From Macrostomum lignano (lineage: Eukaryota), in assembly GCA_002269645.1 (NCBI GenBank), contig NIVC01004141.1, positions 1 to 58,397 on the forward strand: 58,397 nt of DNA. The letters run 5' to 3'. Position 1 is the stretch's first letter. Each line of letters opens with the position of its first letter. The notes under the pieces are model-generated. The model searched no databases, had not been told where the DNA came from, and saw only the letters and a program-made list of their open reading frames with translations. Positions 14,651-36,321 of this stretch are shown piece after piece. Both the position numbers and the translations under genes were made by a program.

Positions 14651-15527
14651 TGAGAGTTAATCAGATCAAGCCTCAATTAAGTGGACATTCCAAATAATTT
14701 AAAAAAATGACCCATCAATGCTCAATTGAAATACTCCACTATATTTTTGTTTCACAAATAATGCTTGCAATAATGCTTTTATGCGTCGCTAATATCTAAA
14801 CATGTACATAAATACTAGAATCAAGTCAAGAGTCAAACAGTTGCTTATTCCGTGGCATAAAAATTACAACTTAACCAATTATGCTGCAATGTTTGTTATA
14901 TGAAAATTCACTTCCTGATTTAGAAATATACCCGGCTGTCAGAGTCTATACTCCGTAAGCCTATTTTCATTCCAAAGCTTAAATATTGGATAAATGGCTA
15001 CAAACATGCAATTCTTTTTTACTGACCTTCAGAATGGATGCTTTGTTTTTATCAGTCTCAGGGTGACTCGTTTTACTCCTTTCGGTATTATTTATAATTC
15101 GTCTATTAACACTGAACTGGCACCAAATAAAACTTTTATATGATAATTTGCCGATATGTTGCGTTAATAACATAACTGGGCATGGTTTTGCAGGGATTAA
15201 AAATCAGGCAAAAATTTTTGCTGTGCCGGCACTGTGTGGCATATGAATTCTGTATAACTGCTGCTAATTAGCGGTGAATAAATTCCGTTACCGGAAAAAT
15301 ACTTTACGGCTTCATTGACTGAGGTTTGGCAATGCTTGTCTGAAATAATTCTTTAATAAAACAAAAATATTTTCTTTTCACGTCAAATACTTTAAGTAGA
15401 AATAAACGCTTTTTGTCGGAAAAATTTGCCACTTCTGCAATAAAATGCCGCAAATGTAGCAGAAATCGGGTATAAAATGAACTTTATACATCCATGACTG
15501 CGGTGCGGTCCGGAAGGCTTGGTTCGA

Positions 15528-15562
15528 CGGTCTCTTACTGCGAAGACTCAATTTATTGCATG
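15528..15562 (+). ncRNA. Spliced-leader (SL) sequence copy followed by GT; candidate SL RNA gene or SL-headed retrocopy
   Basis: CGGTCTCTTACTGCGAAGACTCAATTTATTGCATG matches the Macrostomum lignano leader as I recall it and ends in ATG as flatworm leaders do. Followed by GTTAAC and a stem-loop (AACTGCGCC...GGGTGCAGTT). No canonical AU4-6G Sm site seen close by. Confidence 0.7.
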
Positions 15563-16227
15563 GTTAACTGCGCCACACCATCCGGGTGCAGTTGCCAAAA
15601 CCTTCATCACATCAAGCCTGATTACTTGACCGCACCTTTTTGCAAGTTTTACCTGCTTTTTAGTTGCCGAAAACTGCACAAAGTGTTGGGGGACGGGTTA
15701 GCGACTGTGGCAGTGGACCAGGCTCGATTCCTAGTAGTTAAGCTAGCTTGGTAATAATATCGCTTCGTGCAATTACGATCTCAAACTAGTCGTGAGTCAT
15801 TACGTTGAATCGGCGTAGGAATTGAATTTTGGCTTAACTTTAACGACAAGAAATTGTTAATACCCGCATGCAGTTTTCTGGTACTCATTTGGTCTCTTAA
15901 CTTTCAATCGTCATTCATTTGCTGGGAGGTGGGGCTGGGGTTTAACAAGCGCTTAGCCTGAACTGCGCAAGGCATCGGGATCGGAATCATGAGTTTGTTT
16001 GTTATTGTATATCATTTCCCACGCCTATACTGTATTATTACTGTAGGTCGCGGGTTCGAGTCCCTTACTATTGATCTGCAGCCGATAATGGAGGCCGCCG
16101 CTTTTTGCAGAAACGTGAATTCATCAGCGAGGTGAGTGCGTTTTCCTGCTTTTAGCGATAAATGCATAATATCTCTCACCTTCTGACCCTTTGTGGAAAT
16201 CAATATTGTGTCTCAGGGCACCACAGT

Positions 16228-16290
16228 GCCTGCGGCGCCAAAATGAGTGCCTGCGGCGCCAAAATGAGTGCCTGCGGCGCCAAAATGAGT
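16228..16290. repeat. 21-bp unit x3 (GTGCCTGCGGCGCCAAAATGA)
   Basis: Direct reading. Confidence 0.85.
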
Positions 16291-17103
16291 GCTAACAACA
16301 CCAATTCTCAAAATAATGCCCACGTGTAGGAACTTAGTCAATCATGTACATGTAGAATTCTTGGTTTTGTCCCGGCCCCCCCCCTACCACCAAAAAATCC
16401 ATGGGCTGGTACGAGCGTACATGGGGAGTACGCAAGCACTGAATGAGGGATTTCGCCATTTGTGGAAAATCCGTGCTAGAAACAAAGCGTACTAAAGAGA
16501 CTGGAGCAACTGAAATTTCGCCTGAACTTAGTCTGCATGCCGGCCTCCATTAATTAGCATTTCATGATTTCATGAGAAAATTACTTGATAAACTTGCGAT
16601 ATTGGGAATTCAGTGCTAAAATAACCGAAGACTTCCTTCTGTTTTATCTTCCCATGACTCACCATATAGTAGGAAATAGCCACAGAATTTGAAAGCTAAT
16701 AATAGCGTCGATAATAACGAGCTGAGAGATTTATCCTTGGTGAGTCACACCGACTGAGCAGCATATCCGGTACCGTCCCAGACTCTCCGCTCCATAATTA
16801 GTCTATTCTCGCAATTTCATCATCATAATTCTAAAAATAGGATCTGTCGTTGAAATTGCAAACAGATTAAGCTTCAGAGCGCGTCCAAATTAGCATGTAA
16901 GTTTTTTCTTTTTATACTTCGTATTTTCGGATAAAATTTACGATTCGCAATGGTTTTAGCTCGTATCAAAGATTTATTCACGTAATGTCAGAATCAAACA
17001 AGCACTCCCTCACTGGGCATGGCATTGCACTTCCCGCATCTTTGTGCGATCTCAAGGTCGAGAAACACACCCCATAAAGCACGAAGTCGTAACCTGCTAT
17101 ATT

Positions 17104-17280
17104 AGTCACGTGATCTCAAGGTCACACACCACACCCCATGCAGGACAGAATGGACATTTCCTGACGCGGCCTTCATTTAGTCACGTGATCTCAAGGTCAC
17201 ACACCACACCCCATGCAGGACAGAATGGACATTTCCTGACGCGGCCTTCATTTAGTCAAGGTCACACACCACACCCCCTG
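17104..17280. repeat. About 75-bp direct repeat x2.5 beginning TAGTCACGTGATCTCAAGG
   Basis: Direct reading. TAGTCACGTGATCTCA reappears at 19336-19351, beyond the foldback insertion. Confidence 0.85.
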
Positions 17281-17305
17281 CAGAACAGAATAGACCTGTA
17301 CACTC

Positions 17306-19318
17306 GGGTCCACGACGTTTGCCTGCGGGACGTTTGCCAGCCGACGTTTGCCTGCGGGACGTTTGCCAGCCGACATTTGCCAGCCGACGTTTGCCAGCCG
17401 ACGTTTGCCAGCCGAAGTTTGCCTGCCGGACGTCTGCCTGCGGGACGTTTGCCAGCCGACATTTGCCAGCCGACTTTGCCAGCCGACTTTGCCAGCCGAC
17501 GTTTGCCAGCCGACGTTTGCCAGCGGGACGTTTGCCAGTCGGAAGTTTGCCTGCCGGACGTTTGCCTGCCGGACGTTTGCCAGCCGACGTTTGCCTGCCG
17601 GAAGTTTGCCAGCCAAAATTTGCTAGCCAATATAAAGCCAGTCAGTGAAAAATTTGATACTGAAATATTCGCAGTTTAGCGGTTTGACAAAAACCATTTT
17701 TACTCCAACTTTTTGACGGTTATTCGCAATTTTGCATATATACAAGTTTGAAATGCAAAATATAAAAATTATGCAATTTATATAGATATAAATTATTATG
17801 CAATTTATATAGATTTACATCTAATATCCAGTTTAACAACTATTTTCTTTGAATGTGAAAATATTGTTTACTTTTGACAATTGTGTATCGTTTTTCCCAG
17901 TTTGAGATGTTTGATTTTTGATGTGCGAAAGAAGACGCGCAGATTACAACGGGATCTCCAGCGATTAAGTTATGAGGCAAACAAAAAGCTGCTGAGCGGT
18001 AATTCTGGCTCATATATTTCTCAGTTCATTGGGAGATCCAAAAGTAAGCATTGGATTCCAATTCTGTTGTATTACTACTCAAGTAAGCCAGGAAACCGCG
18101 ATCTCAACGTACATGTGTAGACGAGTCGAAGGCGGTACGTTTTTATAGTAAGCTATATAGCTGAATAGCCAGACAAGCCGCCAGTAGCAAGCTAGTAGGA
18201 TAGCAAGCGCTAGACACTACGTATGCAAAGCTTAGTCACGCCAAGGACTACTAAAGTAGAAGTACGCAGCACTCGAAATCTATGAAAAATTTTTTGAAGG
18301 CCATAGGGAGAAAGGAAGTTTTCATCTTTTCAGCACAACAATTGTTATTGCTTTCATACGAGGCAAACCCAATGTTCATCTTTTGATATGTTGTGCCAAA
18401 ATCGTTGGTAAACTAGATATTAGACGTTAGACTGATGAACTGCATAATTTATATATTTTGCTTTCAAACTTGTATAGATGCAAATAACCGTCAAAAAGTT
18501 GGAGTAAAAACGGTTTTTGTCAAACCGCTAAACTGCGAATATTTCAGTATCACATTTTTCACTGACTGGCTTTATATTGGCTAGCAAATTTTGGCTGGCA
18601 AACGTCGGCTGGCAAACGTCGGCTGGCAAACGTCGGCTGGCAAACGTCGGCTGGCAAACGTCGGCTGGCAAACGTCGGCTGGCAAACGTCGGCTGGCAAA
18701 CGTCCGGCAGGCAAACTTCGGCTGGCAAACGTCCCGCAGGCAAACTTCGGCTGGCAAACGTCGGCTGGCAAACGTCGGCTGGCAAACGTCCGGCAGGCAA
18801 ACTTCGGCTGGCAAACGTCCCGCAGGCAAACGTCGGCTGGCAAACGTCCCGCTGGCAAACGTCCGGCAGGCAAACTTCGGCTGGCAAACGTCCCGCTGGC
18901 AAACGTTGGCTGGCAAACGTCCCGCAGGCAAACGTCGGCTGGCAAACGTCCCGCAGGCAAACGTCCGGCAGGCAAACTTCGGCTGGCAAACGTCGGCTGG
19001 CAAATGTCGGCTGGCAAACGTCGGCTGGCAAACGTCGGCTGGCAAACGTCGGCTGGCAAACGTCCCGCAGGCAAACGTCCGGCAGGCAAACTTCGGCTGG
19101 CAAACGTCCCGCAGGCAAACGTCGGCTGGCAAACGTCCGGCAGGCAAACTTCGGCTGGCAAACGTCCCGCAGGCAAACGTCGGCTGGCAAACGTCCCGCA
19201 GGCAAACTTTGGCTGGCAAACGTCCCACTGGCAAACGTCGGCTGGCAAACGTCGGCTGGCAAACGTCGGCTGGCAAATGTCGGCTGGCAAACGTCCCGCA
19301 GGCAAACGTCGCTATCCC
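17306..19318. mobile_element. Foldback-type non-autonomous DNA transposon with minisatellite-built inverted arms and 8-bp TSD
   Basis: Left arm 17306-17836 and right arm 18409-19318 are inverted copies (14/15-bp GGCTGGCAAACGTC array plus about 200 bp unique AT-rich segment). Termini GGGTCCACGACG and CGTCGCTATCCC. Flanking direct repeat GTACACTC at 17298-17305 and 19319-19326. Confidence 0.85.
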
Positions 19319-19869
19319 GTACACTCGCAGCCTGCTAGTCACGTGATCTCAGTCGCTGCTATGTCGTAGCACTGCACATATTCCTATTGTGTCTGTATTG
19401 CTCAAACTACATAGAAATTGAAAGCTTAAATTCATTTTTCGTACCGTCGGAATTCATCTGTGAATCGGCACTCATTTTGCACGCAGAGATAGCTTTAGGA
19501 GAAGACAATGCGGGCGTAGGAAGCCACGACGAGTTCCGCTTCGCAGGGTCAACAATCAGAGAAAGTCATTTTAAGTCCAACTGTCGCCCTTCCCGCTGAG
19601 ACACGCAGCTTGTCGGTCTGACTGCGCTTGAGAGGGGGATGTTAAATTTTTCCTTGTTCTTTTTTAACTTAGCCGCACAATTCCTTCCCGCTTCCTGTTG
19701 GCTGTCAAGCCGCCGCTATCGCGTGCGAAAGCAGAAGACTGGATGCTTGCTTTCTCTTTTATGCACTCCGAGGGCATGTAGGAGAGAGGATGAGAAGGAG
19801 GGGAGTGAAGAGGTTGAGATGTTGAGAGGGAAGAGGTATATAGATCGAGTTGAGAAGGGAGTGCTGAGA

Positions 19870-20170
19870 TCCCTCTCATCCCCTCCCCTGCCCTCCCTCT
19901 CATCCCCTCCCCTGCCCTCCCTCTCATCCCCTCCCTGCCCTCCCTCTCATCCCTCCCCTGCCCTCCCTCTCATCCCCTCCCCTGCCCTCCCTCTCATCCC
20001 CTCCCCTGCCATCCCTCTCATCCCCTCCCCTGCCCTCCTCATCCCCTCCCCTGCCCTCCCTCTCATCCCTCCCCTGCCCTCCTCATCCCCTCCCCTGCCC
20101 TCCCTCTCATCCCCTCCCCTGCCCTCCCTCTCATCCCTCCCCTGCCCTCCCTCTCATCCTCTTCCCTACC
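19870..20170. repeat. 24-bp pyrimidine-rich minisatellite (CCCTCCCTCTCATCCCCTCCCCTG)
   Basis: Direct reading. Confidence 0.93.
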
Positions 20171-20661
20171 CTCCCTCCAGAATGAATGCATGTGATTCCC
20201 TTCTCAATTTCTCGCCATTGCAGAAACCCAATATAAAGGCCAAAAATCAGCTTATTCGAGAAGCAATGCAGCGCTGTTTAAAAGTGTACGGGGGGCTTAC
20301 CACGGTTAGCAGGCAGTCGTAAAGAAATATCAAAGGAATTACCCCCCACACTCCCAAAATATTGGGAGCGGAGTCAAATCCCCTGACGTTTTCTTTGCTT
20401 CAGCAAAAGCAGAAGACGAAGCCATTCCGTTTCTACTTACTGGCCTTCCATTTTTAGTCCCTGTAAACAACAGCTGTAGTCCGGACTCCGGAGGTGCCGC
20501 GGGGACTCCAGTGGAATGAGGAGTGGGGGCCGGGCCTGTGAGGCGTGGGTCTGTGTGGGCGTTTCGCTGAGTTCCGTCCCTTCCCCGCCCCACCCCCACT
20601 GCTCCCAAAACCGCCATGGATTTCTATGAAACAATGTGGACTGGAAGCGGACCATAGGCCG

Positions 20662-21190
20662 CTGAGGTCGGCTAACTCCGGTCCGCGGGCCGCATGCGGC
20701 CCACCAGGCCACCAAGCCTTTTATCCGGCCCTCGGGGGGTTCTTTGAAACTTCACAATAGCAATCCGGCCCGGGTTGCTTTCACAAGCTCGAAATTTCAC
20801 AACCTCGAAACCAGTTACTTTCATGAGCTCGAAATTTCATAAGCTCGAAATTTTCGAGGTTGTGAAATTTCGAACTTTTGAAATTTCGAGCTTATGAAGT
20901 TTCGGGTTTGTGAAAAGAAGTGCTTTTCGAGGTTGTGAAATTTCGAGCTTGTGAAGCGACCCCTCCGGCCTGCTCAAGGTTTGTCTCTTTTCAGCTCTCT
21001 TTTCTTTTTTCTCCTCTCCCCTCCCCTCTTATCTCCCCTCTTCCCCTCTCCCTCTCCCCTCTACTCTCTCTCCTCTCCCCTCTTTCCGCTCTTCTCTCCT
21101 CTCCCCTCTCCACTCTCACCTTTCTACCCTCCACTCCCCTCTACTCTCTCATCTCCCCCGTCTTCTCTCCTCTTCTCTCTAGATTCTAGA
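20662..21190. mobile_element. hAT-type MITE copy (degenerate)
   Basis: Begins CTGAGGTCGGCTAACTCCGGTCCGCGGGCCGCATGCGGCCC, a typical hAT-MITE end. Shares TTGAAACTTCACAAT..GCAATCCG and GCTCAAGGTTTGT..CAGCTCTCTT with the copy at 27536. Confidence 0.55.
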
Positions 21191-22239
21191 GAGAAGAGGA
21201 CTTTAGTTGTCCTTGATTCAAATTGTCTCTAGGGGGGGGGGGGAGAAATTCTATAATACGGCTCGTAACGTCAATTCCTTCAAATTCTTGCCCATTTTCA
21301 TTCGCGAAGACAAGCTTCAACTTTCTTAGACTCCCTAGTTTTACGCAAATTCTTTTGCAGCTGTAGAAAAAACTGGATTTCAGTGCCCGTCTATAGGTTA
21401 TAGAATTCCAAACCATGCACCTAATTCACGCATAAAAGTCCCTGAGCTTCCCCACTGGTTTACCATTATTACTTTAATACCGACTCAGTGATATTATAGT
21501 TATACTACCGCCCGACGCCCCCCCCCACACTCCAAATCCTCCCTTATTCCTGCACTGTACAGACTGCGCCTGCCTGCCTGCTGACAAAGGCACACGTTTG
21601 CTACTTGCTGCCTGCCCGCCTCCTTGCAAAAAAGTCCTTAACTGGGCCTTTCCGGAGGCAAGCAGACATTGCAATGGCTTAGTAGGAAGAAGAAGGAGGA
21701 AGCACTGAAAGACGGACAGACAGAGAAACAAGAGAAAGCTAAAGAAGAGACGCGTATTTGCTCAATGCGGCCCAGTGTTCACGTGTAGGAAAGACAATTC
21801 TGCAACATGTCTTGTACCTGGCTCGTTCTGTACAAGCACAACTGCTGTAGGCAAAGTAATGTGAAAGTGGAACAGATGAACACTGGCTAAACCCAAAAGA
21901 TGTTTAATGGGGTAGAAGCCAATGTAAATAACATATTGTTTGGCCTAGTGTGTCGAGTTGGATGGGTCAAATGACTCGGAGAGTCCATGTGTGGGATGCT
22001 GCGGAAAACATGAGACCCTGAGGAACCGTGTGCCTATGCAGAGGCTGTGTGGGGGACAGTAACATGTAGGCTCTAAGGAAGAGTCATGCAAATAATCTGC
22101 GAGTTCGGGGGAGATGCGAGACAGACAGTACACGTGGATAGCGAAATGAGTTTTTTTGCTCAAGTTAAACAGCCAATTTTTGCTTTGCAAGGTTTTGCAC
22201 GTGCTGTGATAAAAATCCTGATCAGATTGATAGCGGTAG

Positions 22240-23662: not shown

Positions 23663-23984
23663 GAGTCCTTGTGCATTTCTTAATCCTCTGCTTACCTGGA
23701 TTTTAGCTGAAGCGAATGATTGCTACTGCGAAACATCTAAGCTATATTAATTATTCCCTGTAATTAAGATACAGGCACGCTAAATGAGTAAAGAGAAAAA
23801 GAAAATAAAGCCGCTAGCTTTCAGAGGGCATCCCTCCTGAGACTGTCTCTGCTATTGATTTGAATCAGTTCCCTCCCTATTCCGTGGCTGACACGAACTC
23901 TATAGAAAGATTAGAGAAACCTTATTCGATAAAGATTAGGATCCATGATGACTGGTAGCTGAGGTTGGCGCGGATAACATCCCT

Positions 23985-24403: not shown

Positions 24404-25772
24404 ATGCTCACCGAAGTGTCCGTAGCCGTCAGCTTCGTCACCTCCTTCCTGTACGGCAAGCTGCCCCGTCGGCGGGTGCTCATGCTTGGCGAGGAGCTGG
24501 ACAAGGCCATCCAGGCCAAGTTCCGGGGTCACTGGTACCCGGACCAGCCGCTCAAGGGCACGGCCTACCGCTGCCTGAAGCTGTCCGGCGACAACCCCAA
24601 CCTGCTGCTGTTCGAGGCGGCGAGGGAGATCGGGCTAGAGGCCGCTGAGATACTTCAGCACCTGCCGGACAGCCTCACCCTGTGGATTGATCCCGGGGAA
24701 GTGTCCTACCGGATCGGCGAGAAGGGTGAGGCCGGCTGTTCAGCCTGTTTTTGGGGGATCCATTTTTCGGAAATCTTCAATCCTTTAATTAATACGAGCG
24801 TAAATCTTATATCATCAAATCCAAAGAAATATTCCATACCCAAACTCCAAATCCCTAAGCTCCAAGTCCCTAAGCTCGAAATCCCAAAGCTCGAAATCCC
24901 AAAGCTCCAAATCCCTAAGCTCCAAATCCCGAAGCTCCAAATCCCTAAGCTCCAAATCCCAAAGCTCTAAATCCCTAAGCTCCAAATCCCCAAGCTACAA
25001 ATCCCAAAACGGACTCCCGCCAGGAGCGGTATCGGTGCTCTACACTGACAAAGGTCACGACGAGTCTCCCAGCGAGTTCAACCCGGAGGCCCAAGACTTC
25101 GTCCCAGCCTCGGAGCAGCTGTTGCTGGCGCAGAACTTCGCCCAGCTGGGGCTCGGCCAGCTGTACAGCTCGCAGCAGCAGCAGCAGCAGGACCTCATCA
25201 ACTACAGCCAGTACATGCTGCAGAAGAGCAGCTCGGCGCCCAATTTCTTCACCGCGGCCGCCTTTGCCCAGACCAAATTCGGCAGCACGAAGCTGCGCCA
25301 GCAGACTCGACGGACGGCCGGCGGTCGATCGAACGGCGGCGGCTTCGGGGATAGCTCCGGTCGTCGGGGTGCCGCTAGTCGAGCTGTCGGTGGCGGCGGT
25401 GGCTTCGGTGCCGTGGCCGGAGCCCCGTTGAACTTCAGCGCGCAGCAGCCACCGATTCAGGCGAGCCTCGGGCGCCACTCAACAGTCGCGGCAGCTTCGA
25501 CGGTCGCCTTCAATCGCTCGGTGTCAATGTCGCCGGGAATTGGCTACTCAAGCGTAGACTGGTCGACCGGCCTTGGAGGTCCCGGAGGCAGCGACGTGGG
25601 CGGTCAGAGGCTGTCGGTGCACATCCCGACCGCTGGCGCCAGCTACCACAGCAGCAACGGTTCCAGCCGGCAGACTTCGCCGGGTGCTGCGGCTGCGGCT
25701 GCGGCTGCGGCAGCTGCTTCTGCTGCGTCAGCGTCTGGACGACACACCGAGCAGCTGCTGCTGGCCAATTAG
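24404..25772 (+). CDS. Tob: Tob-type BTG/Tob antiproliferative protein, 356 aa
   Basis: join(24404..24725,25024..25772), phase-1 intron. BTG domain (LYGKLPRRRV..GEEL..FRGHWYPDQPLKGTAYRC; LTLWIDPGEVSYRIGEKG), PAM2-like SEFNPEAQDFVP, Tob-specific FAQTKFGSTK. The upstream ATG at 24314 lies in the SINE and is unlikely to be the start. Confidence 0.92.
24835..25005. repeat. 15-bp minisatellite (CCCTAAGCTCCAAAT) in Tob intron
   Basis: Direct reading; gives the PKLQI tail of the raw ORF. Confidence 0.93.
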
Positions 25773-25884
25773 AATGTTTTCTTTGGATTAAAATCCACTC
25801 ATGAAACTCGCCTCAAGTTAGTGAACGTTTTTCTTTAGGTGAAAACAAGCTGCTAATTATGGACATAGCACCCCATGACAGGCC

Positions 25885-35452: not shown

Positions 35453-36321
35453 GTGGTTTTGATACGATCTTAAAAAGCTGTTTTGTTACTCGCAAATAAG
35501 CCTGTTTGATACATTAGACTACTGTTAGTAGGTAAAATGCATGTTTAGTAAGATCCTTTACATTAATATTTTGATGTCCTCCTAAAAGACAATTCGCTTA
35601 TGAAATAACCGGTAAGTCTTACAAAATCGATTCGTAAATAGTAGAATCGGAAAACGAACTTCTTTGTTTTGTTTTGAGTTCTTAAATTTTGAAAAACTAT
35701 TCAATTATAACTTTCTTACGAAAACGAATTTTCTATTCAGAAATTCGTTGGTCTACTTTTAATACGAGCTAAACCTTCCTAAAAAGTTCTCATGCCTTAA
35801 TCTAATGAGTAAGGAAAATAACGGTATGCTGGAAACAGCAGACCACCGGCATTCCAGTGATTGTCGGAAAGCCAGTTTTTGAAAGGGACGAGGTCGCCCC
35901 AGGGTGTCGGCCTACTCTCGCCGAATGCCCGCCGGTGTTTGCGATCTTCCCTGCTGTGACACGATCTGTGCTGTGAATAATATTCGCGTCAGTCGTGTAT
36001 TTGTTTTAAGAATCAAACAAAATATACGTATAATTTTAAGCCTTAAAGTTCTTTGCAAATGCTTAACTCCTAACTGATGGATCAATTTCATCGATTAAAG
36101 TGCATGCAGTCTGTACTACTCATGTAACGTATATTTTAAAACGTGCTTGAACTTCTAAAAGCAATATATATTAATTATTGGAAATAAGCGAAAATAAGAG
36201 ATTTGTATGTCAACACGTGTATAGCCAGCACTGCTTCTAGGGCCAGTTCTAAACTGGTGGAAAGAAAAATATATGGGCGAGCAAAGAGATATATTGAATG
36301 GGAAACTTGTGAATTTCGAGA

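What the first reader, a model, noticed from the sequence alone, without database searches (positions are those of the whole stretch)
15528..15754. Genomic copy of the spliced leader followed by GT: SL RNA gene or retroposed trans-spliced RNA
Seen: 35-nt CGGTCTCTTACTGCGAAGACTCAATTTATTGCATG, then GTTAAC, a stem-loop (AACTGCGCC/GGGTGCAGTT, about 15566-15593) and U-rich tracts (about 15634-15664). The leader ATG opens a 64-codon ORF ending at 15754. Established: flatworm leaders end in AUG and SL RNA genes have GT directly after the leader; the identity with the M. lignano leader is from memory. Inference: either a (variant) SL RNA gene with a non-canonical Sm site, or a retrocopy of a trans-spliced transcript that happens to continue with GT. 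No poly(A) tail or TSD was found.
Basis: partly seen in the sequence, partly recalled or inferred. Interest (0 to 1): 0.8.

Follow-up and report, generated by a model that had tools for sequence, protein, structure and literature searches.

The report
Stray spliced-leader copy, not SL gene
This flatworm (Macrostomum) DNA holds one isolated, 5'-shortened copy of the spliced leader that lacks what real SL RNA genes of the genus have after the leader, so it is most likely a fossil of an already trans-spliced RNA copied back into the genome.

Summary
Window 15528-15562 is an exact, unique copy of the published 35-nt M. lignano leader, followed by GT.

Transcript-derived leaders of three Macrostomum species are 43-45 nt (GCCGTAAAGA + 35-mer). 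The window keeps only 37 nt (15526-15562).

I recovered two genuine Macrostomum-type SL RNA genes from public contigs (L005, L007). They are 95% identical over 108 nt. Each has the full leader, donor GTAAGACACCG, two further hairpins and the Sm-like site AUUUUUAG.

The window matches them only over 15526-15564 and is unrelated afterwards. A covariance model built from them scores the genes 130-136 bits. It scores the window 26 bits, on the leader hairpin only. Five trans-spliced mRNA contigs score 20-21 bits.

The donor GTTAAC misses the species consensus GT[A/G]AG. The 64-codon ORF has no homologue.

So this is not an SL RNA gene. The best reading is a relic of a trans-spliced RNA's 5' end. 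That reading is unproven: there is no poly(A), no target-site duplication, and the parent gene could not be searched.

One oddity remains. A 9+2+9 bp inverted repeat brackets the relic.

Interest is low.

The parts
15526..15562 (+). Leader relic: the 3' 37 nt (GA + published 35-mer) of the 45-nt Macrostomum spliced leader, ending in ATG. The first 8 nt of the leader are absent.
   Evidence: Exact unique match. 100% identity to the SL RNA gene in L005 over 15526-15564 only. Full leader sequence from PMC5173321 and PMC10468722 Table S3. No match to the leader's 5' half.
15563..15610 (+). Sequence directly 3' of the leader (GTTAACTGCGCC...CATCAC), containing the hairpin 15566-15593. It is unrelated to the SL RNA intron. 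Inferred to be the 5' end of the RNA that had received the leader.
   Evidence: Local alignment to the L005 and L007 introns is no better than shuffles. The covariance model stops at 15566. No other copy exists in the window or in loci L001-L007. GTTAAC misses the GT[G/A]AG donor consensus (PMC8629364).
15502..15523 (+). Left arm of the inverted repeat (GGTGCGGTC C GG A AGGCTTGGT). It ends 2 nt before the leader relic.
   Evidence: Fold of 15500-15645: -52 kcal/mol, z = -3.97, 0 of 200 shuffles as stable. Without the arm, z is only -1.97. It ranks in the top ~6% of GC-matched windows, and most better ones are tandem repeats.
15611..15636 (+). Right arm of the inverted repeat (ATCAAGCCT GATTA CT T GACCGCACC). 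It is followed at once by TTTTT (15637-15641).
   Evidence: the weak Rfam hit traced the same long-range pairing.
15637..15664 (+). GCUUUUUAG (15654-15662) shares only the 7-mer UUUUUAG with the genuine Sm-like AUUUUUAG.
   Evidence: The best local alignment to the real intron is that 7-mer alone, score 14 against a shuffle mean of 14.5. In the 195-nt fold the tracts are mostly paired, and the fold is not unusual (z = -0.77).
15560..15754 (+). 64-codon ORF opened by the leader ATG. Most likely not a gene.
   Evidence: No word-sharing homologue in 5.8 billion clusters. Not on record as a called gene. No Pfam family. An exhaustive HMMER search gave only 3 hits, all unrelated internally repetitive proteins.
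15471..15477 (+). TATAAAA about 25-30 nt upstream of the left repeat arm. It may be a chance match in AT-rich DNA or a promoter element if the locus is transcribed.
   Evidence: Read directly from the sequence. No test of function was possible.

Best explanation
The locus is a non-functional genomic relic of the 5' end of an RNA that had already received the spliced leader by trans-splicing.

Proposed history: a cDNA of that RNA, incomplete at its 5' end so that 8 nt of the leader are missing, was integrated between a GPR180/TMEM145-like gene and a BTG/Tob gene. On this reading the GT after the leader ATG is simply the first two bases of the acceptor exon. The locus does not donate leaders.

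Shown here:
- The leader copy is 5'-truncated.
- Identity to genuine SL RNA genes stops at the splice junction (+2 nt).
- None of the conserved SL RNA parts downstream of the leader is present.

Inferred:
- The RNA/cDNA origin.
- The 3' limit of the inserted piece.
- Possibly, that a short piece (about 85 nt, 15524-15610) was captured at the apex of a pre-existing palindrome. This would explain why there is no poly(A) tail and no target-site duplication.
For: 1. The leader on transcripts of three Macrostomum species is GCCGTAAAGA + 35-mer. The window has only the last 37 nt.
2. Two genuine SL RNA genes were recovered from public contigs: L005 615-722 and L007 1589-1695. They are 95% identical over 108 columns. 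They fold into leader/donor hairpin, hairpin 2, single-stranded AUUUUUAG and hairpin 3. They carry the GTAAG donor described for the 109-bp M. lignano gene.
3. The window matches them only over 15526-15564. Downstream similarity equals that of shuffles.
4. Covariance model R1 scores the genes 135.6 and 129.9 bits. It scores the window 26.2 bits, on model positions 18-49 only. Trans-spliced mRNA contigs L001-L004 and L006 score 20-21.2 bits.
5. GTTAAC violates GT[G/A]AG at positions +3 and +5.
6. Leader-bearing loci that are not SL RNA genes are a described class. Partial-leader loci occur in parasitic flatworm genomes and are attributed to reverse transcription of trans-spliced RNAs (PMC12582326). 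DinoSL relicts are another example (PMC5585692).
7. The left arm of the inverted repeat ends 2 nt before the relic starts. This fits insertion into a hairpin apex.
Against: - No A-rich tract lies between the relic and 23790, and no direct repeat of 9 nt or more flanks it.
- There is no recognisable coding body. The 64-aa ORF has no homologue, and no ORF of normal complexity follows for kilobases.
- No transposon domain is nearby.
- The parent exon beginning GTTAACTGCGCC was not found because no M. lignano genome or transcriptome could be searched.
- The relic is 37/37 intact. A young LINE-type retrocopy should therefore still show its tail.
- The GT after ATG is a coincidence under this reading, at roughly 1 in 10-16.
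Confidence: 0.55

Rival explanations
1. It is a fragment or pseudogene of an SL RNA gene or of SL RNA itself, broken at both ends: within the leader at nt 9, and 2 nt into the intron. It arose by rearrangement or by capture of an SL RNA cDNA fragment.
For: The identity block includes the intron's GT (15563-15564), which this reading predicts. SL RNA is an abundant RNA. Possible SL RNA pseudogenes are reported in parasitic flatworms.
Against: It needs a breakpoint that falls by chance within 2 nt of the splice site, about 4-5% for a 108-nt gene. The next 9 nt match the invariant AAGACACCG at only 2 of 9 positions. Nothing else of the gene is nearby: model R1 finds no further hit in the window.
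Confidence: 0.12
2. It is a functional variant SL RNA gene with a weak donor, a longer intron half and a non-canonical Sm site (GCUUUUUAG). It would donate the same 35-37 nt leader.
For: ATG|GT is present. There is a stable hairpin right after the donor (15566-15593). U-tracts lie downstream, and UUUUUAG is shared with the genuine Sm-like site. Upstream regions are uninformative: even the two genuine genes show no significant promoter similarity.
Against: The first 8 nt of the leader are missing, yet transcripts of three species show only GCCGTAAAGA-type 5' ends. The donor misses the consensus. The leader does not pair with the donor region as it does in the genuine genes (versus 34, 59). There is no sequence similarity to an intron half that is 95% conserved between two sources. 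The covariance-model score is in the mRNA range. The fold from the leader onward is not unusual (z = -0.77). The paper on M. lignano reports a single SL RNA type of 109 bp in 8 copies.
Confidence: 0.04
3. It is a transcribed unit of its own. The TATA box at 15471-15477 would drive an RNA starting near 15500. That RNA carries the DNA-encoded leader either inside a ~136-nt stem-closed RNA ending at TTTTT, or as the 5' exon or 5' UTR of a longer transcript. Such transcripts would look 'SL trans-spliced' in RNA-seq. This could be the locus that Ustyantsev & Berezikov describe as Wasik et al.'s mis-assigned SL RNA at the 5' end of Mlig013257.g1.
For: TATAAAA lies 25-30 nt before the left arm. The 9+2+9 bp closing stem gives z = -3.97. 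T5 follows the right arm directly. PMC8629364 reports a genomic sequence that contains the leader and maps to the 5' end of an annotated 3.1-kb gene.
Against: TATAAAA and T5 are common in this AT-rich spacer. About 6% of GC-matched windows fold as well. There is no Rfam family; the best hit has E = 2.9. There is no second copy to test covariation. Identity with the scaf577 locus could not be checked.
Confidence: 0.12
4. It is an assembly or library artefact, for example a chimeric long read joining cDNA-like sequence to genomic DNA.
For: None directly. The only pointers are the lack of insertion hallmarks and the known difficulty of assembling this repeat-rich genome.
Against: The flanks run on without any composition break. 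The leader is truncated and embedded in an inverted repeat, which a simple chimera would not produce.
Confidence: 0.04

Closest known systems
Macrostomum SL RNA gene. This is the 109-bp gene of M. lignano, 8 copies in the deduplicated genome (Ustyantsev & Berezikov 2021, PMC8629364). Concrete examples recovered here are L005 615-722 and L007 1589-1695.
   Same: 37 nt of the leader ending in AUG, followed by GU.
   Different: The window lacks the first 8 nt of the leader, the GUAAGACACCG donor segment that pairs with the leader, hairpin 2 (GAUCCA/UGGAUC), the Sm-like AUUUUUAGC and hairpin 3 (AGCCC/GGGCU). It scores 26 bits against 130-136 bits with the covariance model.
Partial-leader loci in parasitic flatworm genomes. 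These are 867 candidate loci that were discarded, 597 of them next to LTR/LINE elements (Calvelo et al. 2025, PMC12582326).
   Same: A leader sequence is the only SL RNA feature present. [quoted passage not shown]
   Different: No transposon ORF or domain lies within kilobases here. The leader copy is long and perfect rather than degraded. The host is a free-living macrostomid.
DinoSL relict retrogenes of dinoflagellates (Slamovits & Keeling 2008; Song et al. 2017, PMC5585692).
   Same: A DNA-encoded, often 5'-shortened leader marks a sequence that passed through a mature trans-spliced RNA.
   Different: Dinoflagellate relicts sit upstream of recognisable coding genes with identifiable parents, and are often stacked after repeated recycling. 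Here there is one relict and no recognisable gene body.
The sequence published as the M. lignano 'SL RNA' by Wasik et al. 2015. It was re-assigned to the 5' end of Mlig013257.g1 (scaf577:45663-48770) by Ustyantsev & Berezikov 2021.
   Same: It is a genomic sequence containing the leader that does not fold into three hairpins and is not the SL RNA gene. It could be this very locus.
   Different: Identity could not be tested, because the Wasik paper and the assembly are not held in the tools. The window shows no convincing protein-coding gene after the leader.

Membership tests
SL RNA gene (Macrostomum / flatworm) | Encodes the complete leader found on mRNAs (GCCGTAAAGA + 35-mer) | tested here: not met
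   Only 37 of 45 nt are present (15526-15562). The upstream 8 nt differ.
SL RNA gene (Macrostomum / flatworm) | Consensus splice donor directly after AUG (GTAAG; species consensus GT[G/A]AG) | tested here: not met
   GT is present, but the site reads GTTAAC, wrong at +3 and +5. L005 and L007 both have GTAAGACACCG.
SL RNA gene (Macrostomum / flatworm) | Sequence similarity to known SL RNAs beyond the leader (criterion i of PMC12582326) | tested here: not met
   Local alignment score is 14 against a shuffle mean of 14.4-15.7. The covariance-model hit is limited to model positions 18-49, 26.2 bits.
SL RNA gene (Macrostomum / flatworm) | First hairpin contains the donor site paired to the leader | tested here: not met
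   In L005 and L007, CGGUCUCUUAC pairs with GUAAGACACCG. In the window the donor pairs into an unrelated local hairpin.
SL RNA gene (Macrostomum / flatworm) | Sm-like site between hairpins 2 and 3 | tested here: inconclusive
   U-tracts exist, and GCUUUUUAG (15654-15662) shares UUUUUAG with the genuine AUUUUUAG. It lies 92 nt after the donor rather than 29, is not flanked by the conserved hairpins, and is mostly paired in the MFE fold.
SL RNA gene (Macrostomum / flatworm) | snRNA-type promoter | tested here: inconclusive
   There is no similarity to the L005, L007 or U12 upstream regions. The two genuine genes also show none to each other, so the test has no power. The candidate PSE 9-mer GTTGGTCTA is absent for more than 400 nt upstream.
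SL RNA gene (Macrostomum / flatworm) | Expressed as a short TMG-capped, Sm-bound RNA that donates its leader | not testable with these tools
   No expression data are available.
Retrocopy of a trans-spliced mRNA (leader-tagged processed pseudogene or retrogene) | DNA-encoded leader whose identity ends at the trans-splice junction | tested here: met
   Identity ends at 15564, 2 nt past AUG. The locus behaves like mRNA contigs L001-L006 under model R1.
Retrocopy of a trans-spliced mRNA (leader-tagged processed pseudogene or retrogene) | 3' poly(A) tract | tested here: not met
   The first A-rich tract downstream is at 23790.
Retrocopy of a trans-spliced mRNA (leader-tagged processed pseudogene or retrogene) | Target-site duplication | tested here: not met
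   No direct repeat of 9 nt or more links 15440-15530 to 15563-22000.
Retrocopy of a trans-spliced mRNA (leader-tagged processed pseudogene or retrogene) | Identifiable intron-containing parent gene whose exon follows an AG acceptor | not testable with these tools
   No Macrostomum genome or transcriptome is searchable by DNA. Protein searches with the ORF found nothing real.
Leader-tagged retrotransposon copy | LTR/LINE sequence or RT/gag/integrase ORF next to the leader | tested here: not met
   No Pfam domain was found in the ten ORFs scanned between 14982 and 22974. No dispersed repeat of 15000-17000 exists in the window. No repeat library was available.

The most novel reading that the evidence does not exclude
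The locus is transcribed from its own TATA-type promoter. It would then produce RNAs that carry a DNA-encoded leader, either a stem-closed ~136-nt RNA or the first exon or UTR of a longer transcript. These RNAs would mimic trans-spliced messages without trans-splicing. They could compete for leader-binding factors, and they would be mis-scored as 'SL trans-spliced' in M. lignano annotations.
Probability: 0.08. Interest if true: 0.55.

Novelty: new member of a known kind. Interest (0 to 1): 0.2.

Why it matters
The main value is for annotation.

- A 100% BLAST hit to the 35-nt leader is not enough to call an SL RNA gene in Macrostomum. According to Ustyantsev & Berezikov (PMC8629364), such a mis-call has already been published once for this species.
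- Loci like this one can make a transcript look trans-spliced when the leader is in fact encoded in the DNA.
- The two genuine SL RNA genes recovered here, with the covariance model built from them, give a usable discriminator: above 100 bits against about 20-26 bits.
- If the relic proves to be a short cDNA piece captured at a palindrome apex, it would be a small example of RNA-templated insertion in a flatworm. That is of modest interest.

Tried and rejected
- Rfam found no SL RNA family hit. At gathering threshold only U12 was found. At E<=10 there was a chance-level nematode sRNA hit (E = 2.9), which did point to the long-range stem.
- ARAGORN found no tRNA in the window. The T-arm-like strings at 15720-15735 and 16050-16065 are not tRNA genes.
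- Exact look-ups of the 86-aa and 64-aa ORFs in the contig collection found nothing on record.
- Word-based protein search with the 64-aa ORF found nothing.
- Exhaustive HMMER search gave 3 hits. All are unrelated, internally repetitive proteins whose scores add up over 6-10 weak stretches, so I rejected them as spurious.
- I tried to fetch an allelic or homeologous copy of the locus through neighbouring genes. The GPR180-like exon gave no hit. The BTG exon hit M. lignano proteins, but the near-identical one (P0002) has no contig on record. No comparative locus was obtained.
- Promoter comparison (window versus L005, L007 and U12 upstream) is uninformative, because even the two genuine genes do not align.
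- The viral contig scan for the leader gave 0 hits.
- Wasik et al. 2015 is not held, so its 'SL RNA' sequence could not be compared.
- I considered dinoflagellate-style re-trans-splicing at the leader's internal AG (positions 8-9) as the cause of the truncation. I rejected it because no second leader lies upstream.
- I considered hairpin-primed second-strand synthesis as the origin of the inverted repeat. It is unlikely, because the arms differ by a 4-nt versus 8-nt unmatched centre while the leader is perfect. The repeat therefore looks older than the insertion.

Full report
**1. The observation**

The 35-mer CGGTCTCTTACTGCGAAGACTCAATTTATTGCATG is at 15528-15562 on the + strand. It is the only match in the window even with 3 mismatches, and none occurs in shuffles (for the 3' 20-mer).

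It is exactly the sequence that Ustyantsev & Berezikov give as the M. lignano leader (PMC8629364). It is also contained in the k-mer consensus of Grudniewska et al. (PMC5173321).

- GTTAAC after the leader;
- the hairpin at 15566-15574 / 15584-15593;
- the T-rich tracts at 15637-15660;
- the 64-codon ORF ending at 15754.

**2. The leader copy is incomplete**

The leader reconstructed from transcripts is longer than 35 nt:
- CCGTAAAGA + 35-mer in M. lignano;
- GCCGTAAAGA + 35-mer in M. cliftonense and CGTAAAGA + 35-mer in M. hystrix (PMC10468722, Table S3).

The window reads cttggttcGA before the 35-mer. Only 37 nt (15526-15562) are leader. The 5' half of the leader has no match anywhere in the window.

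**3. Genuine SL RNA genes for comparison**

A scan of JGI metagenome contigs for the leader gave six loci. Five of them (L001-L004, L006) have the leader at a contig end and diverge immediately after ATG. They are trans-spliced mRNAs.

The sixth, L005, has the leader inside a 3-kb genomic contig. It reads ...ctctttGCCGTAAAGA + 35-mer | GTAAGACACCGGTGATCCAATTCTGGATCAGTATTTTTAGCAGCCCTTTCATGGGCTTCC.

A scan of the prokaryotic genome collection gave L007. This contig is binned as a Flavobacteriaceae MAG, yet it carries a second such gene.

The two genes are 95% identical over 108 columns, while their flanks are unrelated. L005, folded alone, gives four canonical parts; the same three hairpins recur in the consensus fold of L005 and L007, which however pairs the Sm-like segment with the leader's 5' end:
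- a first hairpin in which CGGUCUCUUAC pairs with GUAAGACACCG;
- a second hairpin, GAUCCA/UGGAUC;
- a single-stranded AUUUUUAGC;
- a third hairpin, AGCCC/GGGCU.

This matches the verbal description of the 109-bp M. lignano gene: GTAAG donor, three hairpins, and an Sm-like motif between the last two.

**4. The window copy measured against these genes**

BLASTN identity to L005 is exactly 15526-15564. That is GA + 35-mer + GT, 39 nt.

From +3 of the would-be intron, the window matches the invariant AAGACACCG at 2 of 9 positions. Local alignment of 15563-15760 (or to 15900) with either intron finds only TTTTTAG, scoring no better than shuffles.

A covariance model built from the two genes (R1) gave these scores:

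| Source | Score (bits) | Model positions matched |
|---|---|---|
| L005 (SL RNA gene) | 135.6 | 1-108 |
| L007 (SL RNA gene) | 129.9 | 1-108 |
| Window 15535-15566 | 26.2 | 18-49, the leader's internal hairpin only |
| mRNA contigs L001-L004, L006 | 20-21.2 | within 19-48 (L003, cut off at its 5' end, is listed as 8-108) |

Further points against an SL RNA gene:
- The donor GTTAAC misses the species consensus GT[G/A]AG at +3 and +5.
- Folded from the leader onward, the sequence is not unusually structured: z = -1.97 for 118 nt and -0.77 for 195 nt.
- The leader does not pair with the donor region.

The locus therefore fails the defining features of an SL RNA gene that could be tested.

The promoter could not be used either way. 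Even the two genuine genes show no significant upstream similarity.

**5. What the locus most likely is**

Perfect identity to the leader ends at the splice junction and is 5'-truncated. This is what a DNA copy of a mature trans-spliced RNA looks like.

Such loci are a recognised class:
- Calvelo et al. discarded 867 of 1,179 leader-bearing loci in parasitic flatworm genomes as not being SL RNA genes. [quoted passage not shown]
- Dinoflagellate retrogenes are defined by DinoSL relicts (PMC5585692).

Under this reading the GT is the start of the acceptor exon. That is a coincidence of roughly 1 in 10-16.

The rival reading is a doubly broken SL RNA gene fragment. It predicts the GT, but it needs a breakpoint within 2 nt of the splice site (about 4-5%) and a second break inside the leader.

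**6. What does not fit**

The classical marks of LINE-type retroposition are missing:
- The first A-rich tract downstream is 8 kb away, and no flanking direct repeat of 9 nt or more exists.
- No coding body is recognisable. The ORF has no homologue in a word-indexed search of 5.8 billion clusters.
- An exhaustive HMMER search of 1.84 billion representatives gave only spurious repeat-protein hits, and Pfam finds nothing.
- No transposon domain lies nearby.
- The stretch 15000-17000 has no other copy in the window.

Because the relic is 37/37 intact, a recent full-length retrocopy should still show its tail.

**7. An overlooked feature and a possible reconciliation**

The relic is bracketed by an inverted repeat. 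GGTGCGGTC-C-GG-A-AGGCTTGGT (15502-15523) pairs with ATCAAGCCT-GATTA-CT-T-GACCGCACC (15611-15636), as 9+2+9 bp with one G-T.

The evidence that the repeat is real:
- With the arms, the 146-nt fold is -52 kcal/mol, z = -3.97, and 0 of 200 shuffles are as stable.
- About 6% of GC-matched windows do as well, and most of those are tandem repeats.
- The left arm ends 2 nt before the leader starts.

The arms have an unmatched centre (4 versus 8 nt) while the leader is perfect, so the palindrome looks older than the leader.

A short cDNA piece (about 85 nt: 37 nt of leader plus about 48 nt of exon) captured at the apex of a pre-existing hairpin-forming site would need neither poly(A) nor a target-site duplication. 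This is inference only.

There is also TATAAAA at 15471-15477 and TTTTT right after the right arm. These leave room for a transcribed unit. Both are common strings in this AT-rich spacer.

**8. Relation to the literature**

Ustyantsev & Berezikov state that the 'SL RNA' published from the ML2 genome by Wasik et al. does not fold canonically. [quoted passage not shown]

That description fits a locus like this one, and the 35-nt definition of the leader coincides with the part retained here. I could not test identity. The Wasik paper is not held and the assembly is not searchable.

**9. Organism and context**

The BTG/Tob exon at 24404-24967 is near-identical to a UniRef M. lignano protein, apart from indel-type differences.

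The neighbours are ordinary animal genes:
- a GPR180/TMEM145-like gene at 9.9-13.4 kb (+);
- BTG/Tob at 24.4 kb (+);
- a cold-shock-domain gene at 31.6 kb (-);
- U12 snRNA at 35792-35952 (+);
- a GAS2/CH-domain gene at 36.9-39.6 kb (-);
- a CELF-like gene at 46-52 kb (-).

Dense tandem repeats run throughout.

**10. Verdict**

- The SL RNA gene reading is rejected with good evidence.
- The trans-spliced-RNA relic reading is the best available (about 0.55), but it lacks proof of a parent and of insertion hallmarks.
- This is a new example of a known kind of locus and may already be known. Interest is low (0.2). It serves chiefly as a caution for SL RNA gene calling and for calling transcripts 'trans-spliced'.

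Noticed in passing
window 35792-35952 (+), with motif at 35747-35755: There is a complete U12 minor-spliceosomal snRNA gene (Rfam RF00007, 88.7 bits). The 9-mer GTTGGTCTA lies at -45 and occurs only once in the window. The same 9-mer sits at -47 of the SL RNA gene in L007. This makes it a candidate snRNA-type proximal element for Macrostomum. A position-blind alignment test does not find it significant.
   Followed up: partly
L007 1589-1695 (JAGQZA010000190.1): A contig binned as a Flavobacteriaceae MAG carries a flatworm-type SL RNA gene with a 45/45 leader and 95% identity to L005. It is probably eukaryotic DNA mis-binned into a bacterial genome.
   Followed up: partly
L005 599-608, 615-722 and 1774-2923 (JGI Ga0302322_100095745): A metagenome contig carries a genuine Macrostomum-type SL RNA gene, a partial duplicate of the leader's 5' end (CGCCGTAAAC) just upstream, and a long downstream ORF (1774-2923) that I did not run through any family search; by eye it looks like a Na/K-ATPase beta subunit. 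A Macrostomum-like flatworm was evidently present in that sample.
   Followed up: partly
L005 615-624 with 692-700; L007 equivalent: RNAalifold pairs the first 10 nt of the leader (GCCGUAAAGA) with the Sm-like segment UAUUUUUAGC in both genuine SL RNAs. This may be an alternative conformer that hides the Sm site. There is no covariation to test it.
   Followed up: no
L001-L004, L006 (JGI Ga0316592 contigs): Five contigs begin with the Macrostomum leader and continue into ordinary coding mRNAs, for example a GAPDH-like start in L004. They look like metatranscriptome contigs from a Macrostomum-like animal.
   Followed up: no
window 24404-25810 (+): This is a BTG/Tob gene. After the BTG domain, its reading frame runs into a tandem repeat (IPKLQ...) and shifts frame relative to the UniRef M. 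lignano model P0002. The public model seems to carry indel errors, or an intron is unannotated.
   Followed up: partly
window 15720-15735 and 16046-16066 (+): Two short strings resemble tRNA T-arms (GGCTCGATTCC; GGGTTCGAGTCCC). ARAGORN finds no tRNA. They may be remnants of a tRNA-derived repeat.
   Followed up: partly
window 13.7-14.6 kb, 17.0-19.3 kb, 46.7-47.7 kb, 54.0-56 kb and many others: The window has a very high density of short-period tandem arrays (periods 8-37 nt), and some recur in inverted orientation 32 kb apart (4.1-4.5 kb versus 36.3-36.5 kb). Many spurious long ORFs come from them.
   Followed up: no
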